This document shows positions 15,921 to 41,039 of a stretch of DNA of 64,000 nucleotides, in pieces. The DNA lies in assembly GCF_006345805.1 (NCBI RefSeq), contig NC_043007.1, forward strand, positions 20,894,001 through 20,958,000, given 5' to 3'. The translations under genes and the position numbers were made by a program. The notes below the pieces were generated by a model. That model had not been told where the DNA came from. It did not search any database and worked only from the letters and a program-made list of their open reading frames with translations. How positions within the stretch are numbered: position 1 is the first letter of the stretch; each line of letters begins with the position of its first letter. The DNA comes from Octopus sinensis (lineage: Eukaryota).

Positions 15921-16771
15921 GTAAGTTTACCTGCAGTTTTTGTCTATAATAATAATATCTATAGTTGCTGGTCAGTTTTTAGTGCACCTCTCTTGTTTTC
16001 TAACAATTAATATTGTTGGAAAAGGAAACATTGCCAGTGCTACTGAGAAAATTGTTACAACATGGCAAATTGTTTTTTTTTTATTGTTTTACATTCATTT
16101 TCCTGTCCGTATTTTTTTCTTGATTTTTTTGTGCAGTTCTTTGTTACGTCCCTTTTTGCATTACATTTTTTTCTTGCTCGTTTTACCCCTCTACGAGGTT
16201 ATTTTATTTTAATTCTCTCGTAGGAAGGCCTAGCATGGCCAGACGTGTCCTGTCTTGCCTTCAAAACACGCTATGTCTGCTAGCGACAGCTGATGAAGGG
16301 GATTTTTCCTTGTGCAGCATGTCCTGTACTTCGTTTTTCTGCTGTACATAATTGTTTTTCCCATTTTCGTTTTCATCTTGTACTACGTCTCTGTCCTTGT
16401 TGTAACAAAATGGCTTTTCCGTTTTCGTTTCTGTTGATTTTTACGTCTTCTTGTGGTGTCCTGTACGTATATATATTTATATATGCATGTATATATACAT
16501 GTAGATGTCAGTACGTACATATATGTTTGTATGTATGCATATATTTTATTTATTACATATATATATATATATAAGTAAATAAATGAATGGAGTTGAACGA
16601 AGATGTTAACAAAATTCCTTTACTCTCGACATATGTTTCGAAGACAACATGGTTTCATTCCAAAGGAATAAACGGTCGCTTCAACCGTGTTTCTGACGTG
16701 AATTTGCTACCCTGGTATCAGTTCAGCGAATTTTCCATGTTGACAGCAAACAGGATAATTCATTCACCTAT

Positions 16772-16819
<48 letters not shown>

Positions 16820-16822
<3 letters not shown>

Positions 16823-17245
16823 CTCTTTTACTTGTTTCAGTCATTTGACTGCAGTCATACTGGAGCACCGCCTTTAGTCGCGCAAATCGACCCCAGGACT
16901 TATTCTTTGTATATGCCCAGTACTTATTCTATTGGTCTCTTTTGCCTAACCGGTAAGTTACAGGGACATAAACACACCAGCATCGGTTGTGAAGCGATGC
17001 TGGGGGGACAAACACAGACACACACATACATATACACACACACACACACACACATATTTATATATACACACATATATACGACGGGCTTCTTTCAGTTTCC
17101 GTCTACCAAATCCACTCACAAGGCTTTGGTCGGTCCAAGGCTATAGTAGAAGACACTTGCCCAAAGTGCCAAGCAGTGGGACTGAACCCAGAACCGTGTG
17201 GTTGGTAAGCAAGCTGCTTACCACACAGCCACTCCTGTGCCTATT
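16820..17245 (-). mobile_element. Family B SINE
   Basis: Full-length reverse-complement copy. Confidence 0.88.
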
Positions 17246-17510
17246 GTGTATGTGTATGTGTGTGTAGAACAATGAAGAAATAAGTGATGTAGATATCCAC
17301 TTTATACAGCTCAACCAAGTAGCGCTCTGATAGAGCTTCAGGAATATGAAATTAGAGAGAGGAGAAAACAAATTCAAAGGCCGATGTATATATATATTCA
17401 TTCAATCCATAGTAACGAAACTCTCCATATACCTTGTATACTATGGTGAATTTCGTTAATATAGATTGAATGAATGTATACATCGGCTTTTGAATTTGTT
17501 TTCTCCTCTC

Positions 17511-17539
<29 letters not shown>

Positions 17540-17547
<8 letters not shown>

Positions 17548-17975
17548 TAAGGGTAAAAATTGATATTAGTCAATTAAAACCAGTGGTCTAGCACATTAAA
17601 AAGAATCCGAAGATTAAAATATTTATATATACTGCCAAAAGTAGAGGCATTTGAAAAATACTTCCGAACTTAATAGGTTGTACTTTTTGCATGCGGGACT
17701 CCGGTACCGTTTTTCATCTAGTACAGCATATTATGCTCATAGCAAACTGCGCTGACGAAGCTACAGATATCCTTGTGATATTAATAGCTGAAACCGTTCG
17801 GTACGCAGGTGATTATTCCATTTCGTATATTTCTTTTGTCTTATCTATTGCTTTAGGTCGTGCTGAATTTTATTTTATTTGAGAACAAAATCTTTGTGGA
17901 GAATGGCGATTTGACGTCTATATCTAGCATGTTGACTGTCCACTTTTTCGTGTTCAGTCCTTAATTGGTATATAT
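17540..17975 (+). mobile_element. Probable Penelope-like element terminal-repeat fragment between (TA)n tracts, hosting the hammerhead
   Basis: Unique segment bounded by TA microsatellites and containing a type I hammerhead. The Penelope assignment is inferred from the known PLE-hammerhead association. Confidence 0.45.
17747..17808 (+). ncRNA. Type I hammerhead ribozyme, Penelope-type
   Basis: Stem I CUGCG/CGCAG; core CUGACGA; stem II AGCUA/UAGCU extended by GAUAUC/GAUAUU; GAAA; stem III ACC(GUUC)GGU; cleavage triplet GUA (cut after 17803). Confidence 0.82.
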
Positions 17976-17989
17976 ATATATATATATAT

Positions 17990-18375
17990 ACTCTTTACTC
18001 TTTTACTTGTTTCAGTCATTTGACTGCAGCCATGCTGGAGCACCGCCTTTAATCGAGCAACTCGACCCCGAGACTTATTCTTTTGTAAGCCCAGTACTTA
18101 TTCTATCGGTCTCTTTTTGCCGAACCGCTAAGTAACGGGGACATAAACACACCAGCATCGGTTGTCAAGCAATGCTAGGGAGATAAACACATACACGCAT
18201 ATATGTATATATACATATATATGACGGGCTTCTTTCAGTCTCCGTCTACCAAATCCACTCACAAGGCTTTGGTCGGCCCGAGGCTATAGTAGAAGACACT
18301 TGCCCAAGGTGCCACGCAATGGGACTGAACCCGGAACCATGTGGTTGGTAAACAAGCTACTTACCACACAGCCAC
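17990..18375 (-). mobile_element. Family B SINE
   Basis: Full-length reverse-complement copy. Confidence 0.88.
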
Positions 18376-18604
18376 ATATATATATATATCTTATATAAAA
18401 TCCGTTCTGCCTGTCTGTGTGTGTGTGTGTGTGTCTTCTAGGATCTCGGGTATCCTCCATCCGATTGCACTCAAATTTGATATGTAGAAGGTATCAGGGC
18501 GTGTATAATCCAGCTGAAGAAATCCTCTCCAGCATGAAGAAGTTGGTATTAAAATGCTGCTGCTGCTGGTGATGATGATGATGATGATTATCAACAACCT
18601 TTAA

Positions 18605-19018
18605 AATATACCTATTTCATTACTACCCACAAAGGGCTAAACATAGAAGGGACAAACAAGGACAAACAGATTAAGTTGATTACATCGACCCCAGTGCAAA
18701 ACTGGTACTTATTTAATCGACCCCGAAAGGATGAAAGGCAAAGTCAACCTCGGTGGAATTTGAACTCAGAACGTAGCGGTAGACGAAATACCTATTTTTT
18801 TACTACCCACAAGGGGCTAAACACAAAGAGGACAGACAAAAGGATTAAGTCGATTATATCGACCCCAGTGCGTAACTGGTACTTATTTAATCGACCCCGT
18901 AAGGATGAAAGGCAAAGTCGACCTCGGCGGAATTTGAACTCAGAACGTAGCGGCAGACGAAATACCGCTAAGCATTTCGCCCGGCGTGCTAACGTGTCTG
19001 CCAGCTCACCGCCTTCCT
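18605..19018 (-). mobile_element. Family A SINE dimer
   Basis: Two head-to-tail units. Confidence 0.88.
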
Positions 19019-22000
19019 TTAAAATATACCAATGTGTTGAGATGAAACCTGAAACAAAAATCAATACAACGGATGCTCGGATGGTGGCTGCTGATTATTA
19101 ATCAGTATCTTGTTTCATTTAGGTTAGACGTAAAGCGATATCAAAGCAAGATGTATAGTTTTGATGATGTTTAATTAGCACAGCGAAACTTGCACTTGTG
19201 ACATGCAATTGATTGACACAAGTACATCTGCATCAGTTTCACTTTTGTTTAGAACATTTTTCTCTCTTCTTTTTTCCAGTTTTTTGCAATTTTCTTTGGA
19301 GACCATAGTTATGGCTTATGTCCGTATCAGACTTATAATCACTTGCCCAGGGGCTGCATAGCAACATCGAACTCAAAACCATGTGATTGGGAAGCAAGCT
19401 TCTTTTATACTTGACCAGGCCTGCACCAATGTATCATAATATTTTGTTTTGAGGCTTTGTATGGGCCCTGTGCTAGTGGCACATAAAAAGCACCCATTAC
19501 ACTCTTGGAGTTGTTGGCGTTAGGAAGGGCATCCTACCATAGAAACCTTTCCAAATCAGATTGGGACCTGGTACAGCTCCCTAGCTTATCAGTTTTTTGT
19601 CAGACCATCTAATCCATGCCGGCATGGAAAGCAGATGTTAAATAATGATGATAATCTTTTATTCAATGAATGAATGTGGGTTTCAAATTTTGGCACAAGG
19701 CCAGCAAATTCAGGAGAAAGGAGTACGTCAATATCGCATCGACCTCAGCACTCAACTGGTATTTTATTTCTTTATTGCCCACAGGGGGCTTGCGAGCTGG
19801 CAGAAACATTAGCACGCCAGGCGAAATGCTTACTCGTATTTCGTCTGCCGTTATGTTCTGAGTTCAAATTCTGCCGAGGTCGACTTTGCCTTTCATCTTT
19901 TCGGGGTCGATAAATTAAGTACCAGTTACGCACTGGGGTCGATGTAATCGACTAAATACCTATGCCTGTCCTTGTTTGTCCCCTCTGTGTTTAGCCCCTT
20001 GTGGGTAGTAAAGAAATAGGTATTTACTTTATTGACACCGAAAGGATGAAAGGCAAGGGTTGACCTCGATGGGATTTGAACTCAGAACATAAAGACTGAC
20101 AAAATACTGCTAAGCATATTGCCCAGCATGCTAACCAGGTTCTGTCTGCTCGCCACCTTTAAAATGAAAAGCTAAGTTGACCCTTGTGGCATTTGAACAT
20201 AAAGAAATGCTGCTAAACATTTTTGACTGAAGCACTAACGATTCTACCTCCTCACCATTAACGAAATATTGATTGATTATTTATTAGTAAATGAAATCTT
20301 GTGGAAGCCATTGGCCTAATCTTTTGCATTATGCTCGCAAGTCAGAGACATTGCTCGTCTCGCTTCACTGGCCGATAATAGATTCCGCTTCTACTTCACG
20401 CTTGAGTGTTGAGTGTTAATATTGTGGCATCCAACCGTAAGACAATTATTTTTGTGGCAAGCAAATGTCTATGTTCGTTTCTAAAATAAATGATGTGCAT
20501 AAACAGAATGAGTTTATGAATACGTGTTTCCTTTGAAGTAGCTCAGACATTGGTGTGCGGATTAGTTGGTAGGGTCCAAGGAAACCAGTCGGAGATTTGT
20601 GGTTTGCATCCTTCCACTGGCTGGCACTGCTGCTTCATCATCATCATTTAATGTCCACTGGTACTTAATTTATCGATCCCGAAAGGATGAGAGGTCGACT
20701 TTGCCTTTCATCCTTTCGGGGTCAATAAATTAAGTACCAGTTATGCACTGGGGTCGATGTAATCGACTTGATCCGTTTGTCTGTCCTTGTTTCTCCCCTC
20801 TGTGTTTAGCCCCTTGTGGGTAGTAAAGAAATACATTTAATGTCCACTGATCGATGCTTGCATAAACCAGACAGAATTTACTGGGGGCAAATTTTTTTTT
20901 GCGATTGGTTGCATATCCTATTGCCAACCCTCACCTGTTTTCAATCAGGGTAACATTTCTCATGGCTAGATATATTCAAGACAATAGTTCACACACACTC
21001 ATTCTCTCTCTTATTCACTCACACACTAGGTTTCTTTCAATTTCTGTCTACCAATCCACTCTCATAGCTTTGGTCAATCCAGGCTTATAGTCACTTTCCC
21101 GGGGGCTGCATAGCAACATCGAACTCAACACCATGTGATTGGGAAGCAAATTTCTTAAACACTCGACCAGGCCTGCACCAATGAATCATAATATTTTGCT
21201 TTGAAGTTTTGTATGTTTAGTAGACATATTGAATGCTAGGTTTTATTTATTTATTTTTTTCTACAAAACACAGAATTTTGTCAGTGAACAGGTCGCTGTC
21301 TCAAAGCGATTAAAATATTTTGACAAATTAAATTTATATGTTGAAGTGAATCTAACGGCTTTTGTGTGTTTCGTAAATGGCTTATAGACACCTTCCATGC
21401 TGCAATTGTTTTCGTGCCAGCACACGATCTCAGATCGGGTCACTTGCTATGCAAGTACATCTCTGTAATTTCTACAAAGTATTTTATGGAAAAGGGTGAC
21501 TCACATGCAAGTACAAAATAGTAGTTTGCAGGGTTGAACAGAAGTCGTCAAGCTGGTTTACCCTAGGTACATTAATTACAATGGTGTTCTTGTTGAATTA
21601 CATAAGTCATCGAGTGGTGAACTGAAAGAAATATAGTTCCATTTTAAATGCCATACAGTATTTAGTTTCCTATTGCTGCATTCTGAGTTCAAACCACACT
21701 GATTCCAGTTTTGCCGTTTCTTCTTTTCAGAGCAATAAAAACAAATATCAGTAATTTACTAGGATCGGTTTAAATGCTAATAAACACTCGAAAAATTGTC
21801 CTTGGGCTTAAGAAATCAAAAATTTGCTAGCACCTTGGACGAAATGCTTAGCAGCATTTTATCTGCCTCTTTACGTTCAGAGTTCAAATACCATTGAGGC
21901 CATCTTTGCCTGTCATCTCTTTCAGGGTCGATAAAATACAGTACAGCCAAGTACTGGGGTTGATGCAATCGACTTGCCTTCTCCCCTTAAAATTGCTGGC

Positions 22001-22329
22001 CCTGTGCCAAAATTAGAAAAATCTTATACATTATTGCTGCAAACGAAATCACAGTCGCGGCAGATACTGGAGTCACGCAAATTGGCACCCGTGCCGGTGG
22101 CACGTAAACGCACCTATTACACTCTCAGAGTGGTTGGCATTAGAAAACCCATGCCAAATCAGACTGGAGTCTGGTACAGCCTTCCAGCGTACCAGCCCAA
22201 TCAAACCGTCCAACCCATGCTAGCATGGACAACGGACGTTAAATAATGATGACGACGATGTTATAACAACACTAATGTTATGTTGCTTGTTGTGTAATTA
22301 CATATACGCCATACAAAAAAAGGCGTAAC

Positions 22330-22912
22330 TTCGGTATAGGTACCGGAAGTACCGGATACATTTCAAGAAAGTGTTTTTTTTTTATATATATATGGGGGGT
22401 TAGAGTTAGGAGTGGGAGAAAAGGGTTTCTGTTATACTCTTTTACTTGTTTCAGTCATTTGACTGCGGCCATGCTGGAGCACCGCCTTTAGTCGAGCAAA
22501 TCGACCCCGGGACTTATTCTTTGTAAGCCCAGTACTTATTCTATCGGTCTCCTTTGCCGAACCGCTAAGTGACGGGGATGTAAACACACCAGCATCGGTT
22601 GTCAAGCAATGCTAGGGGGACAAACACATACATATACACACACACTTATATATATATATATATATACATATATACGACAGGCTTCTTTCAGTTTCCGTCT
22701 ACCGAATCCACTCACAAGGCATTGGTCAGCCCGGGGCTATAGCAGAAGACACTTGCCCAAGATGCCACGCGGTGGGACTGAACCTGGAACCATGTGGTTG
22801 GTTAGCAAGCTACTTACCACACAGCCACTCCTGCGCCTATAAACAGCCACTCCTGCTTTATCTTCAGAAATGTAAACAAAGCCACTTCGGTACTTACGGT
22901 ACCTATACCGAA
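22330..22912. mobile_element. Unclassified inverted-repeat element (MITE-like)
   Basis: 27-bp inverted repeats, 25/27 identical, at 22330-22356 and 22886-22912; no clear TSD. Confidence 0.6.
22435..22840 (-). mobile_element. Family B SINE nested in an inverted-repeat element
   Basis: Full-length reverse-complement copy between the 22330 and 22912 inverted repeats. Confidence 0.88.
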
Positions 22913-23613
22913 GGATCGCCCCCCCCCCCCCCAATGTTCTATTTTCCAGTTCATAAATGCATATAACTTTTGCTAATATTCTCTTAACATTTTCCCTCTA
23001 AATTAGGAAAATGAAACTGAATTCATAATGGGCCTTTTACTTTTCCAATAAGCTTTGATAGTATAATATAATATGTACGCTAGTGTTGCTATCCATATCT
23101 ATCCAATACACATGATCTGGATCTTCCGTGCTACTTGCTTTAACAATCAGTATAAGCGGTTAATTTGTGACGGACAGACATCATTGTGTTTGTGTCTGCG
23201 TGTGGTGAGAGAAGAAAGCGTGTTGATTTCCTCCGGGAGAACAACGATAAGAGTGCTCTCCCTTGACAAATTAATTGCATTGCTGGTGGGTTTTTTCAAT
23301 ATCGAATTAAAGATAATTAACTTATATTAATTAATTAAAAAAAAAATCTTAACACTTCAAAGTATTTCTCCTTATTAGTAATTTTTGTTTACTTAGTAAA
23401 TGATTTTATCTTTTTACTGATTTATTATTATTATTATTATTATTATCGTCGTCGGCATCTTTACGTTCAGAGTTCGAATTCTACCAACGTTGATTTTGCT
23501 TATCTTGGGGGTGGGGTGGGGGACAAATTAAGTACCAGTGAAACATTGGGGTTGATGTAATCGATTTGTCCCCGTCCCCTCAAATTTCAGGCCTTGCGCC
23601 TATAGTAGAAAGG

Positions 23614-23647
<34 letters not shown>

Positions 23648-23669
23648 TATTATTATTATTATTTATTAA

Positions 23670-24090
23670 GACGGCGAGCTGGCAGAAACGTTAGCACGCC
23701 GAGCGAAATGCTTAGCGGTATTTCGTCTGCCGTTACGTTGTGAGTTCAAATTCCGCCGAGGTCGACTTTGCTTTTCATCCTTTCGGGGTCGATAAATAAA
23801 GTACCAGTTACACACTGGGGTCGATGTAATCGACTTAATTCGTTTGTCTGTCCTTGTTTGTCCTCTCTGTGTTTAGCCCATTGTGGGTAGTAAAGAAATA
23901 GGTATTTCGTCTGTCGTTACGTTCTGAGTTCAAATTCCGCCGAGGTCGACTTTGCTTTTCATCCTTTCGGGGTCGATAAATAAAGTACCAGTTACGCACT
24001 GGGGTCGACGTAATCGACTTAATCCCTTTGTCTGTCCTTGTTTGTCCCCTCTATGTTTAGCCCCTTGTGGGTAGTAAAGAAATAGGTATC
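23670..24090 (+). mobile_element. Family A SINE dimer
   Basis: Second unit restarts at GGTATTTCGTCTG (~23901). Confidence 0.9.
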
Positions 24091-24347
24091 AGTTTCATAA
24101 TCTTCCTCATCCTCAATTCCTAAGTTGCTAACTTCTAATCTATCTCCACTATCTTAATTCTTGGTTAGAACAAACTCAATTTGACTCATTTAGCAGACAT
24201 TAAAGGTGTAAATTGCTTAGATTTTTTTTCTTTTTTCTTTTATAAAGTTTGTTACAAATGGTAACATCATTTGTGCCACAGTTCCCATTTCATTTCTTTT
24301 TCGTACCATAAACACTGCTTTTAATGAAGTAACACTCTATTCATTCA

Positions 24348-24735
24348 TACTCTTTTACTTGTTTCAGTCATTTGACTGCGGCCATGCTGGAGCACCGCCT
24401 TTAATCGAGCAACTCGACCCTGGGACTTATTCTTTGTAAGCCCTGTACTTATTCTATCGGTCTCTTTTGCCGAACCGCTAAGTGATGGGGACGTAAACAC
24501 AACAGCATCGGTTGTCAAACAATGCTAGGGGGACAAGCACAAACACACATGCACATATATATGTACATATATACGACGGGCTTCTTTCAGTTTCCGTCTA
24601 CCAAATCCACTCACAAGGCTTTGGTCGGCCCGAGGCTAGAGTAGAAGACACTTGCACAAGGTGCCACGCAGCAGGACTGAACCCGGAACCATGTGGTTTG
24701 TAAGCAAGCTACTTACCACACAGCCACTCCTGCGT
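24348..24735 (-). mobile_element. Family B SINE
   Basis: Full-length reverse-complement copy. Confidence 0.88.
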
Positions 24736-26345
24736 ACTTCAAAATCACAACTGAGTTCACCAACTGTGATGGTTATGTATAACTTATCAACTTTGTGCTT
24801 TTGGAGCCTGCACAAAAGCCTCAATAAACCAGTTCTTTTGCATGAATGCTGTCGTGTTACTTGTCACTAATCTGAGTCTTATTATTCTATCACTATCTTC
24901 ACTAATTCATTGACTCTCTTAGCTAATTATATTTCGTTTACCTAAGTCAGTTGTACTTTAGTAATTAACAACTTGAGCTGCTTCTTATATCATGAGCTTT
25001 TCTTAGATTTATATGCCATTATTATGAAATCAGATACTTGTGAAATATATTTCTGAATAGCTTTTATTTTCTGAATAACTTGTGAATCATGGGTTCTTTT
25101 AATCATGAGAAGGCAATCTTATTACCACTCTCTTTCTCTACTTATATGTGATAATAAAGAGTTTCTCAAATATGTTTTGCTGAAAGCCAAATTTTCCGTC
25201 TCGGCTCCTGCTGCATGTCAATAACATAATTGCTATTGATGTTGGTTCTTTCCATTTGTTTTCCATTCTGGCAAAGAATGGACGGATCGTTACTGTTTAC
25301 AAACAAGTCTGAAGTTCACATCTCATTCAAAAATCACATTTTGGCTTCATTTCTATAAATGAATGTTCCTTTTATTACCAACCACTTTATGTCGTAGACT
25401 GGGGGGCAATTTATTGGGACACCAATGCTAGAGAGGACTGCCATGTCTTTGATGGGACTAAAGGGGTCCCTTTGACTCTTATGTCCCTGCTAATCAACCA
25501 CTTTACAAAGTATACTTACTAAGTATATAAGTGAAGGTGCATACTGTGTGTTATGTTCTTGAGCAAGAAACTTTATTTCACGTTGCTCCAGTTCACTCGG
25601 CTGTAGAAACGAGTTGTAACATCACTGGTGCCAAGCTGTATCGGCTGCTGCCTTTCACTTGGATTACATCAGTGGAGAAGGGAGGCCGGTATGCATAGGC
25701 AACTGCTGGTCTTCCACAAACAACCTTGCCTGGACTTGTGCCTCAATGGGTAACTCCCATGGTCATTCATGACTGAAGGGGGTCACCCTTACTAAGACTT
25801 AGGTTCGTCATGAGCCTTATGACTTAACAGGCAATTTCTTGGCTTCATTTCTATGACATCTAAGTGAGTGGTTGGCATTAGGAAGGGCATCCAGCCGTAG
25901 AAACATTGCCTGATCAGACTGGGCCTGATGCAGTCTTCTGGCTTCCCAGACCCCGGTTGAACCGTCCAACCCATGCCAGCATGGAAAGCGGACGCTAAAC
26001 GATGATGATGATGATAAGTGAGTAAGATTACTACAGTCGTCTGCCTGAACAGGACTCCAATCTGTTGCAACAGAAACTGGATGTATTTTATTGTGACACC
26101 ACCACAAGTGAGGTTGCTTTGTGTCCCATAGATTTACAATGTCTTTATCACATCTATGATGTGTTTGTCCATTGATGATAAATTATCTGAGAAGATGAGG
26201 AAAAGAGGAAATGTTGACTGATGCTAGCATGTAAAGCATATATTGAACGATACACGCTGCCCTTTCTATATGGAGAGAACCCTTTTGATTCCGGTGGCAC
26301 ATAAAAAGCACCCACTACACTCTCAGATAATAGCTCCTTGCTTAA

Positions 26346-26565
26346 CTCTTTCACATTTAAGCCAGCCATATCCGGCCCAAATATTCTACCAGTTTTATGT
26401 TCATACCAGCCAAATTTGACCTCTCACACCTACCCTACAATGTCCTTCCGTATATAGTCACACCATCTAAATCTCAAAGCTACAAGATAATCCATGATTA
26501 ATTAATTCAAAACAAACTGAATAAATAAGCATTACATCTAACAGAATAACCTGAAAGCAAAAGTG
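26346..26565. mobile_element. Degenerate piggyBac-like MITE, family P1
   Basis: TTAA on both sides; body homologous to 4741-4959. Confidence 0.7.
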
Positions 26566-26627
26566 TTAACCCCCCCCCTCCAGCATTAACAATATCCCTT
26601 AGATCAGTGCTTCTGAAACTGATAAAT

Positions 26628-26855
26628 ACCTATTTCTTTACTACCCACAAGGGGCTAAACACAGAGGGGACAAACAAACGTATTAAGTCGATTACATCGA
26701 CCCCCAGTGCGTAACTGGTACTTATTTAATCGACCCCGAAAGGATGAAAGGCAAAGTCGGCCTCGGCGGAATTTGAACTCAGAACGTAACGGCAGACGAA
26801 ATACGACTACGCATTTCGCCCGGCGTGCTAACGTTTCTGCCAGCTCGCCGCCTTC
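26628..26855 (-). mobile_element. Family A SINE with 12-bp TSD CTGATAAATACC
   Basis: Direct repeat on both flanks. Confidence 0.88.
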
Positions 26856-27789
26856 TGATAAATACCAACCACTCCTCCGCTTTAATTATTAGGGCCACTA
26901 ATGTTTAATTTAATAGGGCCTCACTAATGTGAGGACAGAATGGAGTTTGCATCTATCAACTCTCCTTTCTTGATGGCAAATTTAAAAAGTCTAAAACTGT
27001 CCTATTTTCTTAAACGGGGCAATTTGTCCACCACCCCGCCCACCCCTTTTTTTAATCCTCGCAGTCCCTTCCCTTCCCACGAGGAACACTGACTTAGACA
27101 AGTTAATCCACTATTTCCAGCTAACCATTCAAATAATCCATTATTGTCTCTGCTGTTAGGTTCTATAGAGCATTTATTGCATTGATCCTGTTTATAACGA
27201 CCTCTCTTTCTCTCTCTCTCCCTCCTCCTTTCTCTCCCTCTCCCCTTCTTCCTTCTGTCTCTCCCTCCTTCCCTCCCCCTCTCTCTCCTAGGTACAAGTG
27301 CACTTTTGTGAACGTGGTCGTTTGAAAAGTATGTCTTAACACTCATCTCCTCCTCATCAATGACTGATTCATGTAAACAATCGAAAGACTTCATACTTCC
27401 TGATTAAACAGTATTGAAAACTTCTTTGTTTTCTTACTCGCTCTGCGTTACCTGACTCTAACGTCTCACTCACTCATCTTCTTTGTTTTAGTAATTTGTT
27501 CCTCCTTTCTTCTCGACCATCACTTATCTCTTTCAGTCTCGGCTACTATAGATTTCTACCACAATGTGTCGTCTGGTCGACTTCGTTGCTGTAGATCAAG
27601 ATATTGCATTAAGTTGTCCCTCAGGAATACCCACAGCTCACTTGCTCCATATAAATTCTCTGTGTCTGTATAAACAATTGAGTTAGATAAAAGATCTCTC
27701 TTAGGCCAGCTTCTACTGGCTTCTACTTGTTGGAATTATGCTTCCTACTTTTATTGCTTTTGCACGTAGCTAATCTATTTTTATTATCA

Positions 27790-28685
27790 GTGCCACGTAA
27801 AAGGTGCCGGTGCCACTGTCGTGAAGAGCATCCATGCCACTGTCATGAAAAGCGACCGTGCTGCTGCTGCAAAAAGCACCCTTGCCACTGCAGAAAAAAG
27901 CACCCATCTCCCTGCTGTGAGAAGCACCCGTGCCACTTCCGCAAAAAGCACCCGTTCTACTGCCATGAAAAGTACCTGTGCCACTACTGTGAATAGCACC
28001 CGTACCACTGCTGTGAAAAGCACTCCCGTGCCACTGCCGCAAAAAGCACCCTGTGCCACTGCCATGAAAAGCACCCGTGCCACTGCTGTGAAAAGCACCA
28101 GTGTCACTTCCGCAAAAAGCACCCATGACACTGTTGCAAAAAGCACCTGTGCCACTACCATGAAAAGCACCCGTGCCACTGCTGCGAAAAGCACTCGTGC
28201 CACTCCCATGCCACTGCTGTGAAAAACAACTGTGCCACTTCCACGAAAAGCACCCATCCCACTGCTGTGAAAAGTGCTTGTTCCGCTGTTGCGACAAGCA
28301 CCTGTGCTGCTGCCGCAAAAAGCGCCCCATGTCACTGCCATGAAAAGCACCTGTGCCACTGCTGCGAAAAGCACCAGTGCCACTTCCGCAAAAAGCACCC
28401 ATGTCACTTCTGCGAAAAGCTCCTGTGCCACCTCCGCAAAAAGCACCCTTGCTGGTGCCACCTAATAGCACTGGTGCCAGTGAATTGTAAAAACCACTGG
28501 TTATGGTACCATGTAAAAAGCACTCAGTACATGCTATGAAGTGGTTGGCATCAGGGAGGGCATCCAGCTGTAGAAACCAAGTCAAAACAACTGTGGAACC
28601 CGATGCGGCCCTCTGGCTGGCCAGCTCTTGTCAAACTGTCCGCCCTATGCCAGCAAAGAAAATTGGCAGTAAATGATGATGATAA
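27790..28685 (+). repeat. Degenerate 24-bp VNTR (~27 units, AAAAGCACCCGTGCCACTGCTGTG) inside a family C retroposon whose tail is at 28510-28685
   Basis: 8-aa periodicity (KSTRATAV) in the ORF track; followed by the family C tail and (GAT)n. Confidence 0.88.
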
Positions 28686-28959
28686 TGAACCCCTGGACAT
28701 TACTGTCTCGGGTCCTAGGATTCATAGGGCTCATTACCTGGTTTCCATGAGATATAAGTGACCAAGATCATAAGGTTCCCCCTAAACAAGATGCCAGTCT
28801 GTTGAAGGGTTATTCATTTACAGCTTAGTGGACAAGACCAGTGTGAAATGAAGTGTTTTGCTCAAGAACGCACCACACCACCCAGTTTGGAAATTGAAAC
28901 CACATTCTTAAAATCAAATCAAATCACAGTACTTTGGAATTGTCGGGCGATGTTCGGTG

Positions 28960-29430
28960 CTTGAGGGGTCCTATTGAGTCAAGTAAATCAGATAAAATCA
29001 CAATCAGATGGAAATTGTAGTTGTGGCCGTTACCAGTGCTGGTAGCACATGATAAGCACCATTCATTCATGCATGGGTTGCTGTGAGAGCTGCCTGACTG
29101 GCTCCCTGCACCAGTGGTACATAAAAAGCACCATCCGAACGTGGTCGATGCCAGCCCCCTGCCCCGACTGGCTCCTATGCCGGCGACATGTAAAAAGCAC
29201 CATCCAAACGTGACCGATGTCAGTGCCGCCTGACTGGCTCCCGTGCCGGTGACACATAAAAAGCATCCACTGCACTCTCAGAGTGGTTGGTGTTAGGAAG
29301 AGCATCCGGCTGTAGAAACAGTGTCAGATCAGACTGGAGCCTGGTGCGGCCTCCAGGCTTGCCAGTCACTATTCAAACTGTCCAACCCATGCCAGCATGG
29401 AAAACAGACATTAAACGATGATGATGATGA
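28960..29430 (+). mobile_element. Family C retroposon
   Basis: Three internal units plus tail. Confidence 0.85.
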
Positions 29431-29758
29431 TTCTTGCAATCATGAGTGCAACACCCTAACCAGTGGGCCATGCACCTTCACAAGAATCTATTCTGGAGAT
29501 TGAAATATTTTGCAGTGCTAAATTTAATGCTTTTAATTATTAGTATGCTGTAATAACTAATGAAATCTCGGCAATTTGGCTTTGTGTTCAACATCAGTGG
29601 TAATTAATTCCCAGAATGAAGTTAGTGTAGCAGATGTTTAACTCATTTATGTCTGAGAACCCAAGAATCCTTATTTTGTATTTCATTCCTTGTGGTATAA
29701 CCATAATCTCTCTGCATGCCAATTCACTCACCCCGGTGCTTACCAATGTGACCTTTAA

Positions 29759-30217
29759 CCCTTTCATTACTGTATTTATTTTGAGATGCTCTATGTTTCT
29801 TTCAATTACTTTAAATATAACAAAGAATTTAGTAAAATAACTTGGTTATCATTAAGCTAGTGTTAGGAACATTAATTGTGACTAAAGTTTGGTGGAAGAT
29901 TTTAATTCAAAACTTATGAAAACAAGACATTTGTACTCAGAGCCAGAGCTGGTTTCAGCTAGGTTGGTATCAAAAGGGTTAAGAATTGTTTCTCTATTAT
30001 ATATTTTAATCATTTTGTTATCATATTTCTGTTGAGATACTCTGTGTTTCTTTCAATTAATTTTAAATATAACAAAGAATTTAGTAAAGTAACTTAGTTT
30101 ATCATTCAGCTAGTGTTAGGAACATAAATTATGACTAAGGTTTGGTGGAAGATTTTAATTCAAAACTTATGAGAAAACAAGTCATTTGTACTCAGAGCCG
30201 GTTTGGTAACGAAAGGG
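29759..30217. mobile_element. piggyBac-like MITE, family P2: a complete copy (29759-29978) plus a second right half
   Basis: TTAA-CCCTTT...AAAGGG-TTAA; second right end GGTAACGAAAGGG-TTAA at 30205-30221. Confidence 0.8.
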
Positions 30218-31381
30218 TTAAAGTTTCTTGTTACAATGAACAAATCCCTAATATATCTATCGTGATTTTCATGACCTTCCTTGTCTTGCCTGTGTAAAGA
30301 CGACAATCATTGTCACTCACCAGATTTAACCACTTTTGCTATAAATTTTCTTCTTCTCTGAGTATATCTACATCGTTTATTGTTTCAATCTCTGCTTTTC
30401 CATGCTTGCATGGCTGAGACAGAATTTATTGAGGCAGATTTTCTACAGCTGGGTGCCATTCCTGTCACCAACTCTCACCTGTTTCCAAGCAAGGTAATAT
30501 TTCCCCATAGCCAGACACGTTTTTTGAAGGACACCTCTTGCAAGATGGTGACATTCACTTACGACTATCACATGATGTCAAAGCAAGCAGACAGTAACAC
30601 ACTTACGCACACACACACACACACACGTGCGTGCACACTTACGCACACACACACACAATGGGCCTCCAATTAATTTCTGTTCTCCACATCTACTCACAAG
30701 GCTTTGGTCAACACTTGACCGAGGTGCCACGCAGTGGGACTGAGCCCGAAACCATGTGATCAGGAAGCAGACTTCTTTACCACGCAGTCATACCTCTACT
30801 TATTATGTCTATTCAGAATAAATCAATAAAGTGAGACTGTAAAAGAATATTAATTTGTTTTAGATGTTTTACGTTAAACAGTTTGACCTGGCAGTGGTCT
30901 AAGTGACCTTGTTAATTGCAAAAGCTGAACAGCTGCCCCTAACACACACACACACACACACACACACTATTCTTATTAAAACTTGAATTACTTAATAATT
31001 TTATTATACAGAGATTTCTCCAAATCTGAATTCCTTAAGGGACTAATTAGTCAAGTGGTTAGAAATTTTCAGTTTTCAATTTCAAACTTCGGTATTTTTA
31101 ATCAACGAATCCCACAAAACAGGAAATCGGTAATCTGTAATATTCAAACCAGAAATGCAATTCATAAAGAAAAAAAAAAAAAAAAAGAATGTAATTAAAA
31201 ATGTGTAATTAGTGCTGTTAGTTAGCAATTTAAATTAGATTTTTCGATTAAGAATAGGGAGAAGATAGGATCCTTTTTTGTATTAGCCTAAATTTATATC
31301 GTTAACCGACTGCTGATTAAGAAAGCTGCTGTTTAATGTCGGTGAGTTGTTCCTTTGTTTTACCACCTTTGAGAGTTATTA

Positions 31382-31546
31382 CATCATCATCATCATCGTT
31401 TAACGTCCGCTTTCCATGCTAGCATGGGTTCGAGGATTTGACTGAGGACTGGCAAACCAGATGGCTGCACCAGGCTCCAGGCTGATCTGGCAGAGTTTCT
31501 ACAGCTAGATGCCCTTCCTAATGCCAACCACTCCAAGAGTGTAGTG
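31382..31546 (-). mobile_element. Family C retroposon 3' end with (GAT)n tail, host of the 66-bp array
   Basis: Reverse complement of the GGCGTTAGGAAGGGCATCCAGCTGTAGAAAC...ATGGAAAGCGGACGTTAAACGATGATG tail seen in many copies. Confidence 0.9.
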
Positions 31547-34500
31547 GGTGCTTTTATGTACCACCGGCACCAGGGCCAGTTAGGTGGTACTGGTAACGGC
31601 CACGCTCAAATGGTGCTTTTTATGTGCCACCGACACAAGGGCCAGTTAGGTGGTACTGGCAACGGCCACGCTCAAATGGTGCTTTTTATGTGCCACCGGC
31701 ACCAGGGCCAGTTAGGTGGTACTGGCAACGGCCACGCTCAAATGTGCTTTTTATGTGCCACCGGCACCAGGGCCAGTTAGGTGGTACTGGCAACGCCACG
31801 CTCAAATGGTGCTTTTTATGTGCCACCGGCACCAGGGCCAGTTAGGTGGTACTAGCAACGGCCACGCTCAAATGGTGCTTTTTATGTGCCACCGGCACCA
31901 GGGCCAGTCAGGTGGTGCTGGCAACGGCCACGCTCAAATGGTGCTTTTTATGTGCCCCCGCACCAGGGCCAGTTAGGTGGTACTGGCAACGGCCATGCTC
32001 AAATGGTGCTTTTTATGTGCCACCGGCACCAGGGCCAGTTAGGTGGTACTGGCAACGGCCACGCTCAAATGGTGCTTTTTATGTGCCACAGGCACCAGGG
32101 CCAGTTAGGTGGTACTGGCAACGGCCACGCTCAAATGGTGCTTTTTATGTGCCACCGGCACCAGGGCCAGTTAGGTGGTACTGGCAACGGCCACGCTCAA
32201 ATGGTGCTTTTTATGTGCCACCGGCACCAGGGCCAGTCAGGTGGTACTGGCAACGGCCACGCTCAAATGGTGCTTTTTATGTGCCACCGGCACCAGGGCC
32301 AGTTAGGTGGTACTGGCAACGGCCACGCTCAAATGGTGCTTTTTATGTGCCACGGGCACCAGGGCCAGTTAGGTGGTACTGGCAACGGCCATGCTCAAAT
32401 GGTGCTTTTTATGTGCCACGGACACCAGGGCCAGTTAGGTGGTACTGGCAACGGCCACGCTCAAATGGTGCTTTTTATGTACCACCGGCACCAGGGCCAG
32501 TTAGGTGGTACTGGCAACGGCCACACTCAAATGGTGCTTTTTATGTGCCACCGGCACCAGGGCCAGTTAGGTGGTACTGGCAACGGCCACGCTCAAATGG
32601 TGCTTTTTATGTGCCACCGGCACCAGGGCCAGTTAGGTGGTACTGGCAACAGCCACGCTCAAATGGTGCTTTTTATGTGCCACCGGCACCAGGGCCAGTT
32701 AGGTGGTACTGGCAACAGCCACGCTCAAATGGTGCTTTTTATGTGCCACCGGCACCAGGGCCAGTCAGGTGGTACTGGCAACGGCCACGCTCAAATGGTG
32801 CTTTTTATGTGCCACCGGCACCAGGGCCACTTAGGTGGTACTGGCAACAGCCACGCTCAAATGGTGCTTTTTATGTGCCACCGGCACCAGGGCCAGTTAG
32901 GTGGTACTGGCAACAGCCACGCTCAAATGGTGCTTTTTATGTGCCACCGGCACCAGGGCCAGTTAGGTGGTACTGGCAACGGCCATGCTCAAATGGTGCT
33001 TTTTATGTGCCACGGACACCAGGGCCAGTTAGGTGGTACTGGCAACGGCCACGCTCAAATGGTGCTTTTTATGTGCCACGGGCACCAGGGCCAGTTAGGT
33101 GGTACTGGCAACGGCCACACTCAAATGGTGCTTTTTATGTGCCACGGGCACCAGGGCCAGTTAGGTGGTACTGGCAACGGCCACGCTCAAATGGTGCTTT
33201 TTATGTGCCAACGGGCACCAGGGCCAGTTAGGTGGTACTGGCAACGGCCACACTCAAATGGTGCTTTTTATGTGCCACGGACACCAGGGCCAGTTAGGTG
33301 GTACTGGCAACGGCCACGCTCAAATGGTGCTTTTTATGTGTGCCACGGGCACCAGGGCCAGTTAGGTGGTACTGGCAACGGCCACACTCAAATGGTGCTT
33401 TTTATGTGCCACGGGCACCAGGGCCAGTTAGGTGGTACTGGCAACGGCCACGCTCAAATGGTGCTTTTTATGTGCCACGGGCACCAGGGCCAGTTAGGTG
33501 GTACTGGCAACGGCCACACTCAAATGGTGCTTTTTATGTGCCACGGACACCAGGGCCAGTTAGGTGGTACTGGCAACGCCCACGCTCAAATGGTGCTTTT
33601 TATGTGCCACGGGCACCAGGGCCAGTTAGGTGGTACTGGCAACGGCCACACTCAAATGGTGCTTTTTATGTGCCACGGGCACCAGGGCCAGTTAGGTGGT
33701 ACTGGCAACGGCCACGCTCAAATGGTGCTTTTTATGTGCCACGGGCACCAGGGCCAGTTAGGTGGTACTGGCAACGGCCACACTCAAATGGTGCTTTTTA
33801 TGTGCCACGGACACCAGGGCCAGTTAGGTGGTACTGGCAACGGCCACGCTCAAATGGTGCTTTTTATGTGCCACGGGCACCAGGGCCAGTTAGGTGGTAC
33901 TGGCAACGGCCACACTCAAATGGTGCTTTTTATGTGCCACCGGCACCAGGGCCAGTTAGGTGGTACTGGCAACGGCCACGCTCAAATGGTGCTTTTTATG
34001 TGCCACCGGCACCAGGGCAGTTAGGTGGTACTGGCAACGCCCACGCTCAAATGGTGCTTTTTATGTGCCACGGGCACCAGGGCCAGTTAGGTGGTACTGG
34101 CAACGGCCACACTCAAATGGTGCTTTTTATGTGCCAACGGGCACCAGGGCCAGTTAGGTGGTACTGGCAACGGCCACGCTCAAATGGTGCTTTTTATGTG
34201 CCACGGGCACCAGGGCCAGTTAGGTGGTACTGGCAACGGCCACACTCAAATGGTGCTTTTTATGTGCCACGGACACCAGGGCCAGTTAGGTGGTACTGGC
34301 AACGGCCACGCTCAAATGGTGCTTTTTATGTGCCACCGGCACCAGGGCCAGTTAGGTGGTACTGGCAACGGCCACACTCAAATGGTGCTTTTTATGTGCC
34401 ACCGGCACCAGGGCCAGTTAGGTGGTACTGGCAACGGCCACGCTCAAATGGTGCTTTTTATGTGCCACCGGCACCAGGGCCAGTTAGGTGGTACTGGCAA

Positions 34501-36247
34501 CGGCCACGCTCAAATGGTGCTTTTTATGTACCACCGGCACCAGGGCCAGTTAGGTGGTACTGGCAACGGCCACGCTCAAATGGTGCTTTTTATGTGCCAC
34601 CGGCACCAGGGCCAGTTAGGTGGTACTGGCAATGGCCACGCTCAAATGGTGCTTTTTATGAGCCACCGGCACCAGGGCCAGTTAGGTGGTACTGGCAACG
34701 GCCACGCTCAAATGGTGCTTTTTATGTGCAACGGCACCAGGGCCAGTTAGATGGTACTGGCAACGGCCACGCTCAAATGGTGCTTTTTATGTGCCACCGG
34801 CACCAGGGCCAGTTAGATGGTACTGGCAACGGCCACGCTCAAATGGTGCTTTTTATGTGCCACCGGCACCAGGGCCAGTTGGGTGGTACTGGCAACGGCC
34901 ACGCTCAATGGTGCTTTTTATGTGCCACCGGCACCAGGGCCAGTTAGGGGTACTGGCAACGGCCATGCTCAAATGGTGCTTTTTATATGCCACCGGCACC
35001 AGGGCCAGTTAGGTGGTACTGGCAACGGCCATGCTCAAATGGTGCTTTTTATGTGCCACGGACACCAGGGCCAGTTAGGTGGTACTGGCAACGGCCATGC
35101 TCAAATGGTGCTTTTTATGTGCCACCGGCACCAGGGCCAGTTAGGTGGTACTGGCAACGGCCACACTCAAATGGTGCTTTTTATGTGCCACCGGCACCAG
35201 GGCCAGTTAGGTGGTACTGGCAACGGCCATGCTCAAATGGTGCTTTTTATGTGCCACGGACACCAGGGCCAGTTAGGTGGTACTGGCAACGGCCATGCTC
35301 AAATGGTGCTTTTTATGTGCCACCGCACCAGGGCCAGTTAGGTGGTACTGGCAACGGCCACACTCAAATGGTGCTTTTTATGTGCCACGGCACCAGGGCC
35401 AGTTAGGTGGTACTGGCAACGGCCATGCTCAAATGGTGCTTTTTATGTGCCACCGGCACCAGGGCCAGTTAGGTGGTACTGGCAATGGCCACGCTCAAAT
35501 GGTGCTTTTTATGAGCCACCGGCACCAGGGCCAGTTAGGTGGTACTGGCAACGGCCACGCTCAAATGGTGCTTTTTATGTGCCACCAGCACCAGGGCCAG
35601 TTAGGTGGTACTGGCAACGGCCACGCTCAAATGGTGCTTTTTATGTGCCACCAGCACCAGGGCCAGTTAGGTGGTACTGGCAACGGCCACGCTCAAATGG
35701 TGCTTTTTATGTGCCACCGGCACCAGGGCCAGTTAGGTGGTGGTACTGGCAACGGCCACGCTCAAATGGTGTTTTTTATGTGCCACCAGCACAAGAGCCA
35801 GTCAGGTGGTACTGGCAACGGCCACGCTCAAATGGTGCTTTTTATGTGCCACCGGCACCAGGGCCAGTTAGGTGGTACTGGCAACGGCCACACTCAAATG
35901 GTGCTTTTTATGTGCCACCGGCACCAGGGCCAGTTAGGTGGTACTGGCAACGGCCACACTCAAATGGTGCTTTTTATGTGCCACCGGCACCAGGGCCAGT
36001 CAGGTGGTACTGGCAACGGCCACACTCAAATGGTGCTTTTTATGTGCCACCGGCACCAGGGCCAGTCAGGCGGTACTGGCAACGGCCACACTCAAATGGT
36101 GCTTTTTATGTGCCACCGGCACCAGAGCCAGTTAGGTGGTACTGGCAACGGCCACACTCAAATGGTGCTTTTTATGTGCCACCGGCACCAGGGCCAGTCA
36201 GGTGGTACTGGCAACGGCCACACTCAAATGGTGCTTTTTATGTGCCA
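31547..36247 (-). repeat. 66-bp tandem satellite, ~71 units, expanded from the internal repeat of a family C retroposon
   Basis: Unit GTGCCACCGGCACCAGGGCCAGTTAGGTGGTACTGGCAACGGCCACGCTCAAATGGTGCTTTTTAT; 66-bp period (e.g. 32101 to 32167); contiguous with the retroposon 3' tail at 31382-31546. Confidence 0.95.
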
Positions 36248-36962: not shown

Positions 36963-36979
36963 TAAAATAACACATATCA

Positions 36980-40815: not shown

Positions 40816-41039
40816 TTTCTGCCACACACACACACCATAGGCTTCCACACATTCTCCATCTAGTGAATTTAATCATAAAGCATAGTTTAGCCTGGGGCTA
40901 TAATAGAAGACTCTCAAGGTGCTGCATAATGGGACTGAACCCAAAACCATGTGGTTGCAAAGCAAGCTTCTTAACCACACAGCTATGCCCGGAGAAGCAT
41001 CTAAAATATAACAAGTCTTGTCTTCTCTATTTTATGCTA

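What the first reader, a model, noticed from the sequence alone, without database searches (positions are those of the whole stretch)
17747..17808. Apparently intact self-cleaving hammerhead ribozyme inside the FBXL5 pre-mRNA
Seen: a complete type I hammerhead on the FBXL5 sense strand, 1.8 kb into the 31-kb intron. It has a 5-bp GC-rich stem I (CUGCG/CGCAG), core CUGACGA, an extended stem II, GAAA, near-palindromic stem III ACCG-UU-CGGU and a GUA cleavage site (cut after 17803). The one non-canonical feature is A10.1-U11.1 in place of G-C. Known: Penelope-like retroelements carry type I hammerheads, often acting as dimers through a palindromic stem III. Inference: cleavage would sever the nascent RNA before the only exon encoding the [2Fe-2S] module, which could tune full-length FBXL5 output. 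Neighbouring motifs are decayed while this one is intact, so it is either young or under selection.
Basis: partly seen in the sequence, partly recalled or inferred. Interest (0 to 1): 0.85.

Follow-up and report, generated by a model that had tools for sequence, protein, structure and literature searches.

The report
Lone hammerhead-like motif in FBXL5 intron
A 62-base stretch in the last intron of an FBXL5 gene matches the textbook hammerhead-ribozyme pattern, but it is a single atypical copy with no database support or detectable relatives, so it is more likely a stray retroelement-derived or chance motif than a switch controlling the gene.

Summary
The sequence is as described. Window 17747-17808 (+) fits the minimal type I hammerhead consensus: 5-bp stem I, CUGACGA, a long stem II, GAAA, a short stem III and a GUA cleavage site after 17803. 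It lies in sense, 1.8 kb into the 31.3-kb last intron of an FBXL5 orthologue. A match this good is expected 6e-4 times per 64-kb window, but about 20 times per 2.5-Gb genome.

Support for a working ribozyme is weak:
- No Rfam hammerhead model reports it, even at E<=10 on an 86-nt stretch.
- 10.1-11.1 is A-U, not the conserved G-C.
- Stem III is marginal (-0.9 kcal/mol; pair probability about 0.02), because the core pairs with its 3' strand.
- No second copy, tandem partner or Penelope-like ORF exists in the window. The "decayed neighbouring motifs" were not found.

The 426-bp carrier is CpG-rich (o/e 1.17 against 0.53) and sits between two (TA)n tracts. That hints at a young retroelement-derived insert.

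Genome copy number and orthologous conservation could not be tested with these collections.

Best reading: a solitary, probably retroelement-derived hammerhead-like motif, weak or inactive alone. The FBXL5-tuning idea is unsupported. Interest is low to moderate.

The parts
17747..17808 (+). Complete match to the minimal type I hammerhead consensus (62 nt)
   Evidence: Sequence. It is the only descriptor hit in the window at medium or strict settings. The chance rate is 6e-4 per window. No Rfam hit.
17747..17751 (+). Stem I, 5' strand CUGCG; it pairs with 17804-17808
   Evidence: Pair probability is 0.6-1.0 in the 62-nt and 425-nt contexts but about 0.01 in a 161-nt context.
17752..17758 (+). 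Core C3 U4 G5 A6 C7 G8 A9 (CUGACGA)
   Evidence: It fits the minimal core consensus as written in PMC7151607.
17759..17789 (+). Extended stem II: A10.1-U11.1 closing pair, 5 bp, a 2x2 internal loop, 6 bp and a CUUGU loop
   Evidence: Pair probabilities are 0.85-1.0 in all contexts. The closing pair is A-U, not the conserved G-C.
17790..17793 (+). G12 A13 A14 A15.1 (GAAA)
17793..17802 (+). Stem III, ACC-GUUC-GGU (3 bp plus a tetraloop); U16.1 is at 17802
   Evidence: The hairpin alone is -0.9 kcal/mol, with pair probability about 0.02. An intermolecular duplex of two copies is -11.2 kcal/mol.
17803..17804 (+). Predicted scissile bond between A17 (17803) and C1.1 (17804)
   Evidence: Follows from the consensus register. 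Cleavage itself was not tested.
17804..17808 (+). Stem I, 3' strand CGCAG
17543..17968 (+). 426-bp carrier segment, single-copy within the window, CpG-rich; possibly a young insert
   Evidence: No other copy by blastn or nhmmer. CpG o/e is 1.17 against 0.53 for the window, in the top 2.7% of 426-nt windows. The RNA fold z-score is -2.75.
17517..17542 (.). (TA)13 tract on the left flank of the carrier segment
17969..17990 (.). (TA)11 tract on the right flank; it also heads the SINE-like copy at 17992-18200
15921..47215 (+). Last intron of the FBXL5 orthologue (31,295 nt), which hosts the motif
   Evidence: Donor CAG|GTAAGT and acceptor TCTAG|A. The flanking exons match 6VCD_B.
47216..47444 (+). 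Last coding exon of FBXL5 (final LRR plus the C-terminal Cys cluster ASGCQNLQC..RVCCRNGE, then the stop codon)

Best explanation
The motif is a solitary hammerhead-consensus sequence on a 426-bp, CpG-undepleted segment lodged between two (TA)n tracts. The segment is most likely a solo or 5'-truncated piece of a hammerhead-bearing retroelement, such as a Penelope-like pLTR or a retrozyme monomer. It landed in sense orientation in the last intron of FBXL5.

Shown:
- The sequence satisfies the minimal core and the three-helix layout.
- The carrier segment is compositionally young-looking.

Inferred:
- The retroelement origin.
- Poor cleavage as a lone monomer in a pre-mRNA, for four reasons. The closing pair of stem II is A-U instead of G-C. 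Stem III is marginal. The core is sequestered by an alternative pairing. No stem I/stem II tertiary contacts are recognisable.

On this reading the motif is a neutral passenger with little or no effect on FBXL5 output.
For: - The motif is present and improbable for a single window (6e-4).
- The carrier segment has CpG o/e 1.17 against 0.53 for the window, in the top 2.7% of 426-nt windows. High values otherwise fall mostly on repeat copies.
- It is flanked on both sides by (TA)n. PMC8557442 lists (TA)n as a preferred target of Penelope-like elements.
- The 425-nt RNA folds better than 99 of 100 shuffles (z -2.75).
- Its architecture is a short helix I (5 bp), a long helix II and a short helix III. 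This resembles the Penelope-associated variants of PMC4209133, which have helix I of 4-5 bp, helix II of 7-8 bp and an unstable helix III.
- Cephalopod genomes carry Penelope-like elements (PMC13282606) and Rfam-detectable type I hammerheads (235 in the giant squid, PMC6962438).
- Solo retrozyme monomers in introns are common where such elements exist: 43% of copies are intronic in Xenopus (bioRxiv 10.64898/2026.07.22.740005).
- Weak activity is suggested by A10.1-U11.1, a stem III probability of about 0.02, and the hammerhead fold at -17.6 against an MFE of -19.4 kcal/mol.
- Known Penelope-element hammerheads are themselves poor cleavers as single motifs (PMC4209133).
Against: - No second copy of the 426-bp segment exists in a 64-kb window that holds 15 or more copies of other repeat families.
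- No reverse transcriptase or GIY-YIG domain appears among the 150 longest ORFs.
- No tandem arrangement is present.
- The hallmarks that PMC4209133 used to argue against chance are absent or untestable. These are the conserved G10.1-C11.1, an extra nucleotide between A9 and 10.1, and families with covariation.
- The Rfam Hammerhead_1 model, which does find cephalopod hammerheads, does not report this motif.
- The right-hand (TA)n also belongs to the adjacent SINE-like copy, so the 'insertion into (TA)n' reading is not compelling.
- Genome-wide copy number could not be measured.
Confidence: 0.48

Rival explanations
1. Chance match. The minimal hammerhead consensus carries little information, and this is one of the few dozen fortuitous matches expected in a multi-gigabase genome. 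It has no ribozyme ancestry or activity.
For: - Simulation gives about 23 matches of this quality per 2.5 Gb.
- Perreault et al. state that consensus matches are expected by chance in large databases (PMC3088659).
- 10.1-11.1 is A-U, as random pairing would often give.
- No Rfam hit.
- The local fold z-score is only -1.64.
- No relatives were found anywhere.
- CUGANGA occurs at its chance frequency.
Against: - The per-window expectation is only 6e-4.
- The motif falls in the 2.7% most CpG-rich sequence of the window, which a uniformly placed chance hit would rarely do.
- All three helices are at or above natural lengths, and stem II is unusually stable.
Confidence: 0.32
2. Active but neutral or slightly harmful passenger. 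The motif cleaves slowly in cis. Because about 29.4 kb of intron is still to be transcribed, it would cut a fraction of nascent FBXL5 transcripts. This would be a recent insertion not yet purged, not a selected function.
For: - The core is complete.
- The carrier looks young.
- The long downstream intron gives minutes for even a slow ribozyme to act. This is an inference. The same kinetic-competition logic is used for the CPEB3 intronic ribozyme (PMC10274809).
- Retrozymes are under-represented in introns, which suggests that genic copies carry a cost (bioRxiv 10.64898/2026.07.22.740005).
Against: - The structural weaknesses are the same: A-U at 10.1-11.1, stem III probability about 0.02, and a competing fold.
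- Single Penelope-element-type motifs showed no detectable cleavage in vitro (PMC4209133).
- From my own knowledge, not checked here: co-transcriptional cleavage inside an intron need not prevent splicing, because of exon tethering (Dye, Gromak and Proudfoot 2006).
Confidence: 0.13
3. Selected regulator. A functional intronic hammerhead severs the pre-mRNA before the exon that encodes the [2Fe-2S] Cys cluster, and so tunes the output of full-length FBXL5.
For: - The motif is in sense orientation, upstream of the only exon with the C-terminal Cys cluster.
- Conserved intronic hammerheads (RECK, C10orf118; PMC3088659) and the CPEB3 ribozyme (PMC10274809) are precedents.
- CpGs inside the motif are undecayed.
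Against: - No evidence of conservation could be obtained.
- The whole 426-bp carrier is CpG-rich, not just the motif. That points to youth rather than motif-specific constraint.
- The motif has a non-consensus 10.1-11.1 pair, no tertiary-contact loops and an unfavourable predicted fold.
- No Rfam hit to HH9, HH10 or Hammerhead_1.
Confidence: 0.07

Closest known systems
Hammerhead variants of Penelope-like elements (Cervera and de la Pena 2014, PMC4209133)
   Same: - Type I topology.
- Short helix I (5 bp) with no defined loop 1.
- Longer-than-usual helix II.
- A short, unstable helix III whose arms could pair between two molecules.
- Low expected activity as a single motif.
- The host phylum carries Penelope-like elements (PMC13282606).
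   Different: - A10.1-U11.1 instead of the highly conserved G10.1-C11.1.
- No unpaired nucleotide between A9 and 10.1.
- Helix III is a true 3-bp hairpin, not 1-2 bp with a palindromic loop.
- No pLTR/RT/GIY-YIG context in the window.
- No family of copies is visible.
Metazoan non-LTR retrozymes with type I hammerheads (Cervera and de la Pena 2020, PMC7229834; bioRxiv 10.64898/2026.07.22.740005)
   Same: - The carrier is within the 170-450 bp unit size.
- Low GC (35%).
- Type I motif.
- The carrier RNA is more structured than shuffles.
- Solo monomers in introns are known.
   Different: - There is no tandem repeat, only a single unit.
- No helix I/II tertiary-interaction loops are recognisable.
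- Rfam Hammerhead_1 does not detect it.
Conserved intronic hammerheads HH9/HH10 of amniotes (RECK, C10orf118; PMC3088659, PMC10761166)
   Same: A sense-strand hammerhead inside an intron of a protein-coding gene, with a proposed effect on mRNA biogenesis.
   Different: - Those are conserved across mammals and birds, cleave in vitro and have pseudoknot or loop contacts.
- Here conservation is untested, activity is untested, and no Rfam HH9/HH10 match was found.
CPEB3 intronic HDV-like ribozyme (PMC10274809)
   Same: The mechanistic idea: self-scission of an intron competes kinetically with transcription and splicing of the downstream exon, and so sets mRNA yield.
   Different: It is a different ribozyme class, with demonstrated activity and conservation in mammals. 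Nothing comparable is shown here.
Minimal (laboratory) hammerhead
   Same: The core C3-A9, G12-A14, A15.1-U16.1, H17 and three plain helices, without tertiary stabilising elements (consensus as in PMC7151607).
   Different: - The natural context is a 31-kb intron.
- From my own knowledge: minimal hammerheads need about 10 mM Mg2+ for good rates. Free intracellular Mg2+ is much lower (the limitation is discussed in PMC1199579).

Membership tests
Hammerhead ribozyme (type I) | Conserved core C3 U4 G5 A6 N7 G8 A9 and G12 A13 A14 | tested here: met
   CUGACGA at 17752-17758 and GAA at 17790-17792.
Hammerhead ribozyme (type I) | A15.1-U16.1 pair and a non-G nucleotide at position 17 before the scissile bond | tested here: met
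   A17793-U17802 and A17803.
Hammerhead ribozyme (type I) | Three helices around the core, with helix I open (type I) | tested here: inconclusive
   Helices of 5, 5(+6) and 3 bp can be drawn. In the thermodynamic ensemble, helix III has probability about 0.02 and the core pairs elsewhere. Tertiary energy is not modelled.
Hammerhead ribozyme (type I) | Conserved G10.1-C11.1 closing pair of helix II (metal site with the A9 phosphate; PMC7151607) | tested here: not met
   A17759-U17789.
Hammerhead ribozyme (type I) | Helix I / helix II tertiary contacts needed for activity at physiological Mg2+ | tested here: inconclusive
   Helix I has no loop or bulge. Helix II carries a 2x2 internal loop and a distant CUUGU loop. 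No recognisable canonical contact is present, and this cannot be decided from sequence.
Hammerhead ribozyme (type I) | Score at or above the Rfam gathering threshold (Hammerhead_1/3/II/HH9/HH10) | tested here: not met
   No hit at gathering score. None at E<=10 in 901-nt and 86-nt stretches or at E<=5 in 5 kb.
Hammerhead ribozyme (type I) | Covariation in the helices across homologues | not testable with these tools
   No homologue was retrievable. The control with a SINE ORF also found nothing, so the collections are blind to this genome's non-coding DNA.
Hammerhead ribozyme (type I) | Site-specific self-cleavage | not testable with these tools
   Needs in vitro transcription and cleavage assays, or in vivo mapping of RNA ends.
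Penelope-like-element hammerhead | Located in a pLTR flanking an RT/GIY-YIG ORF | tested here: not met
   Pfam scan of the 150 longest ORFs of the window found no RVT or GIY-YIG domain. A solo or truncated pLTR is not excluded.
Penelope-like-element hammerhead | Extra unpaired nucleotide between A9 and G10.1, together with G10.1-C11.1 (PMC4209133) | tested here: not met
   Reading A17759 as the extra base gives G17760-C17788. It then leaves an extra U17789 before G12, and the simpler reading is an A-U pair.
Penelope-like-element hammerhead | Many copies per genome that form consensus families | not testable with these tools
   There is a single copy in the window. The source genome is not in any searchable collection.
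Non-LTR retrozyme | Tandem repeats of 150-450 bp, each with a type I hammerhead | tested here: not met
   No tandem or dispersed second unit. Only a solo monomer remains possible.
Conserved intronic hammerhead (HH9/HH10-like) | Conservation at the orthologous intron position across species | not testable with these tools
   The nearest related sequence is a 918-bp contig that covers only the exon and 184 nt of the intron (82% identity).

The most novel reading that the evidence does not exclude
A lineage-specific, catalytically competent hammerhead, with a tolerated A10.1-U11.1 pair and an extended helix II, cleaves nascent FBXL5 pre-mRNA 1.9 kb into its 31-kb last intron. This would lower production of the isoform that carries the [2Fe-2S] C-terminal module. 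It would be a ribozyme-based control point in an iron/oxygen-sensing E3 ligase of an invertebrate.
Probability: 0.05. Interest if true: 0.7.

Novelty: new member of a known kind. Interest (0 to 1): 0.25.

Why it matters
If the motif were active and conserved, it would be a rare invertebrate example of an intronic self-cleaving ribozyme wired to a specific host gene, and a metabolically interesting one (FBXL5 controls IRP2 and iron homeostasis). It would join RECK, C10orf118 and CPEB3, whose biological roles are still poorly understood. As the evidence stands, it mainly illustrates how often the low-information hammerhead consensus turns up in repeat-rich animal genomes. It also shows that family context, covariation and cleavage data are needed before function is inferred.

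Tried and rejected
1. Rfam 15. I searched at gathering score on the whole window, then at E<=10 on 901-nt and 86-nt stretches, and at E<=5 on the first 5 kb of the intron. No hammerhead family appeared. The only hits were sub-threshold miRNA-like matches on hairpins and (TA)n.

2. Second copies in the window. blastn (word sizes 9 and 7) and nhmmer found none for 17543-17968.

3. Orthologues or paralogues through protein space.
- An exact look-up of the 63-aa ORF over the motif found nothing.
- A word-indexed homology search found nothing.
- An exhaustive HMMER search gave two hits. The better one is spurious: P0010 is a SprB-repeat adhesin with a type IX secretion signal domain, and six weak repeat matches inflated its E-value. 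P0011 (E 3.9e-05) was not examined further.
- A control with the abundant SINE-like ORF also found nothing. These negatives therefore say nothing about copy number.

4. The FBXL5 exon search returned only an 88%-identical product on 918-bp Logan contigs. These cover 184 nt of intron at 82% identity. No orthologous intron is available.

5. A metagenome scan with an 18-base pattern from the motif gave 68 matches. All were similar only within the pattern.

6. A search for a Penelope-like-element ORF (Pfam on the 150 longest ORFs) found no RT or GIY-YIG domain.

7. ARAGORN on 16.5-19.2 kb found no tRNA-like gene.

8. The supplements of PMC4209133 and PMC8557442, which might hold mollusc hammerhead sequences, are not held as text.

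9. I rejected the reading in which A17759 is the Penelope-type extra nucleotide. It leaves an unpaired U before G12.

Full report
OBSERVATION. The sequence at 17747-17808 (+) reads CUGCG-CUGACGA-AGCUA CA GAUAUC CUUGU GAUAUU AA UAGCU-GAAA-CCGUUCGG-UA-CGCAG. In hammerhead numbering:
- Stem I is 17747-17751 paired with 17804-17808 (5 bp, four of them G-C).
- C3-A9 is 17752-17758.
- Stem II is 17759-17789.
- G12-A15.1 is 17790-17793.
- Stem III is 17793-17802.
- U16.1 is 17802 and A17 is 17803.
- The predicted scissile bond is 17803/17804.

My own descriptor scan finds this as the only hit on either strand of the window at medium and strict settings. The innermost G-C of 'ACCG-UU-CGGU' would close a 2-nt loop, so the hairpin is really 3 bp plus a GUUC tetraloop.

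CONTEXT. The host gene is an FBXL5 orthologue on the + strand.
- The concatenated exon ORFs match PDB 6VCD chain B (F-box/LRR-repeat protein 5) with E 1.4e-25. The match includes the C-terminal ASGCQNLQC...RVCCRNGE cysteine cluster.
- An F-box exon lies near 5.9 kb and further LRR exons near 10.5 and 15.4 kb.
- The donor is CAG|GTAAGT at 15920/15921 and the acceptor is a polypyrimidine tract plus TCTAG|A at 47215/47216. The reading frame is kept across the junction.
- The intron is 31,295 nt. The motif begins 1,826 nt into it, in sense.
- I could not verify the species. The closest sequence in the collections is an 88%-identical exon product on 918-bp Logan contigs (82% nucleotide identity).

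IS IT MORE THAN CHANCE? I simulated 640 Mb of sequence with the window's strand-symmetrised dinucleotide content.
- Type I matches with stems of at least 5/5/3 bp, and any pair allowed at 10.1-11.1, occur 6e-4 times per 64-kb window (both strands). That is about 23 times per 2.5-Gb genome.
- With stems of at least 4/3/2 bp the figures are 0.018 per window and about 700 per genome.
- CUGANGA itself is at its chance frequency: 25 observed against 24.6 expected.

The match is therefore surprising for one window but expected somewhere in a large genome. Perreault et al. make the same point (PMC3088659).

SUPPORT FROM MODELS AND FOLDING.
- Rfam 15 reports no hammerhead family at gathering score on the whole window. 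It reports none at E<=10 on a 901-nt or an 86-nt stretch around the motif, and none at E<=5 over the first 5 kb of the intron. Rfam Hammerhead_1 does find 235 loci in the giant squid genome (PMC6962438). This motif therefore differs from the canonical cephalopod hammerheads.
- The 76-nt region has an MFE of -19.4 kcal/mol (z -1.64). In that fold the core CUGACG pairs with the 3' strand of stem III. The hammerhead fold costs -17.6 kcal/mol.
- In the ensemble, stem II is essentially always formed. Stem I is formed in two of three contexts. Stem III has a pair probability of about 0.02 and is worth only -0.9 kcal/mol alone.
- Two copies could form an intermolecular helix III of -11.2 kcal/mol. 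This is the dimer route known for newt and Penelope-element hammerheads (PMC4209133). The pre-mRNA holds only one copy.
- The closing pair of stem II is A-U rather than the highly conserved G10.1-C11.1, whose guanine contributes to a metal site with the A9 phosphate (PMC7151607). From memory, unverified: this change lowers but need not abolish activity in minimal hammerheads.
- No stem I loop or bulge is available for the usual tertiary contact with loop II.

WHAT CARRIES IT?
- The motif lies in a 426-bp segment (17543-17968) that has no other copy in the window by blastn or nhmmer.
- It lies between a (TA)13 tract at 17517-17542 and a (TA)11 tract at 17969-17990. The right-hand tract also heads a SINE-like repeat (17992-18200) with at least 15 copies in the window, many of them preceded by (TA)n.
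- Upstream is a 180-nt self-complementary hairpin at 17344-17523.
- The segment's CpG o/e is 1.17, against 0.53 for the window and a median of 0.49. That puts it in the top 2.7% of 426-nt windows, and most other high values lie on repeat copies.
- The 425-nt RNA folds better than 99 of 100 shuffles (z -2.75).
- Penelope-like elements prefer microsatellite targets, including (TA)n (PMC8557442). Octopus genomes carry such elements (PMC13282606).
- Solo retrozyme monomers are common and often intronic in animals that have them (bioRxiv 10.64898/2026.07.22.740005).

These points suggest a young retroelement-derived insert, but they do not show it. No reverse transcriptase or GIY-YIG domain is present among the 150 longest ORFs of the window. 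There is no tandem partner. The hallmarks used by Cervera and de la Pena to argue against chance are absent or untestable here. These are G10.1-C11.1, an extra base between A9 and 10.1, and covarying families (PMC4209133).

RELATIVES ELSEWHERE.
- The source genome is not in any collection I could search by DNA.
- Protein-space work-arounds failed. These were an exact look-up, a word-indexed search and an exhaustive search with the ORF that overlaps the motif.
- The better of the two hits from the exhaustive search, P0010, is a spurious multi-repeat match to a bacterial SprB-type adhesin. The other, P0011, was not examined.
- The same approach also failed for the abundant SINE-like repeat. The negatives are therefore uninformative.
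- A metagenome scan with an 18-base pattern gave 68 matches with no similarity beyond the pattern.

MECHANISM AND RIVALS.
- Best reading (about 0.48): a solitary, probably retroelement-derived hammerhead-like motif that is weak or inactive as a lone monomer and neutral for FBXL5.
- Chance match (about 0.32).
- Slowly active but unselected passenger (about 0.13). The 29.4 kb of intron still to be transcribed would give a slow ribozyme minutes to act. The same kinetic logic is used for the CPEB3 ribozyme (PMC10274809). From my own knowledge, intron cleavage need not block splicing.
Position is the only argument for it. The CpG richness extends over the whole carrier, which points to youth rather than motif-specific constraint.

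COMPARISON AND VERDICT. The motif works like, and formally resembles, a minimal type I hammerhead. Its architecture is nearest to the Penelope-element and retrozyme variants. It fails two tested membership features: the G10.1-C11.1 pair and the Rfam thresholds. The family-level features (covariation, copy families, cleavage) could not be tested. Intronic hammerheads and retroelement hammerheads are both known kinds. At most this is a new, atypical member. Interest is low to moderate, pending a genome-wide copy count, an orthologous alignment and a cleavage assay.

Noticed in passing
window 31419-36300 (approx.), + strand, inside the same FBXL5 intron: A large tandem array of a 66-bp unit (about 69 copies). 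The central copies are 95-99% identical, and there are occasional 130-135-bp and 201-bp steps. Long ORFs run through it and give spurious FG-GAP_3 Pfam hits.
   Followed up: partly
window 17344-17523: A 180-nt self-complementary hairpin (arms about 81% complementary) lies just upstream of the (TA)13 tract. It gives a sub-threshold mir-2513-like Rfam match (43 bits against a gathering score of 89) and has no other copy in the window. It looks like a MITE-like or foldback remnant.
   Followed up: partly
window 17992-18200, 16821-17024, 22435-22632, 24348-24550, 51653-51858, 63305-63503 and others: A SINE-like repeat family of about 200 bp has at least 15 copies (71-94% identity) on both strands. 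Many copies are preceded by a (TA)n tract of variable length (0-21 units). ARAGORN finds no tRNA-like gene in 16.5-19.2 kb.
   Followed up: partly
window 62131-63209: Transposon remnants sit downstream of FBXL5. One is an ORF with a Tc1/mariner-type HTH (HTH_Tnp_Tc3_2, E 3.5e-8; peptide at 62864-62908). The other is an ORF at about 62425-62469 that, by eye only, has a LINE ORF2 C-terminal-like motif (...FFTLRVAEAWNKLP...).
   Followed up: no
window 8623-9347, 18606-19010, 23669-24088, 40584-40814, 43793-44028: Further dispersed repeat families (D17/D20) of about 155-236 bp occur partly in short tandem runs and in both orientations. These copies are among the most CpG-rich stretches of the window.
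   Followed up: no
window 17655-17879 (+), ORF over the motif: The 75-aa stop-to-stop ORF scores E 2e-9 against P0010, a 3003-aa SprB-repeat protein with a type IX secretion signal domain. The score is inflated because six weak (30-43% identity) matches to one repeat unit are summed. It is not homology.
   Followed up: yes
L001/L002 (Logan SRR11869394, SRR11869391) against window 15315-16108: A related species' FBXL5 exon plus 184 nt of downstream intron aligns at 82% nucleotide identity. The start of the intron is therefore alignable between species, and a proper orthologous comparison of the hammerhead site should be feasible with full assemblies.
   Followed up: partly
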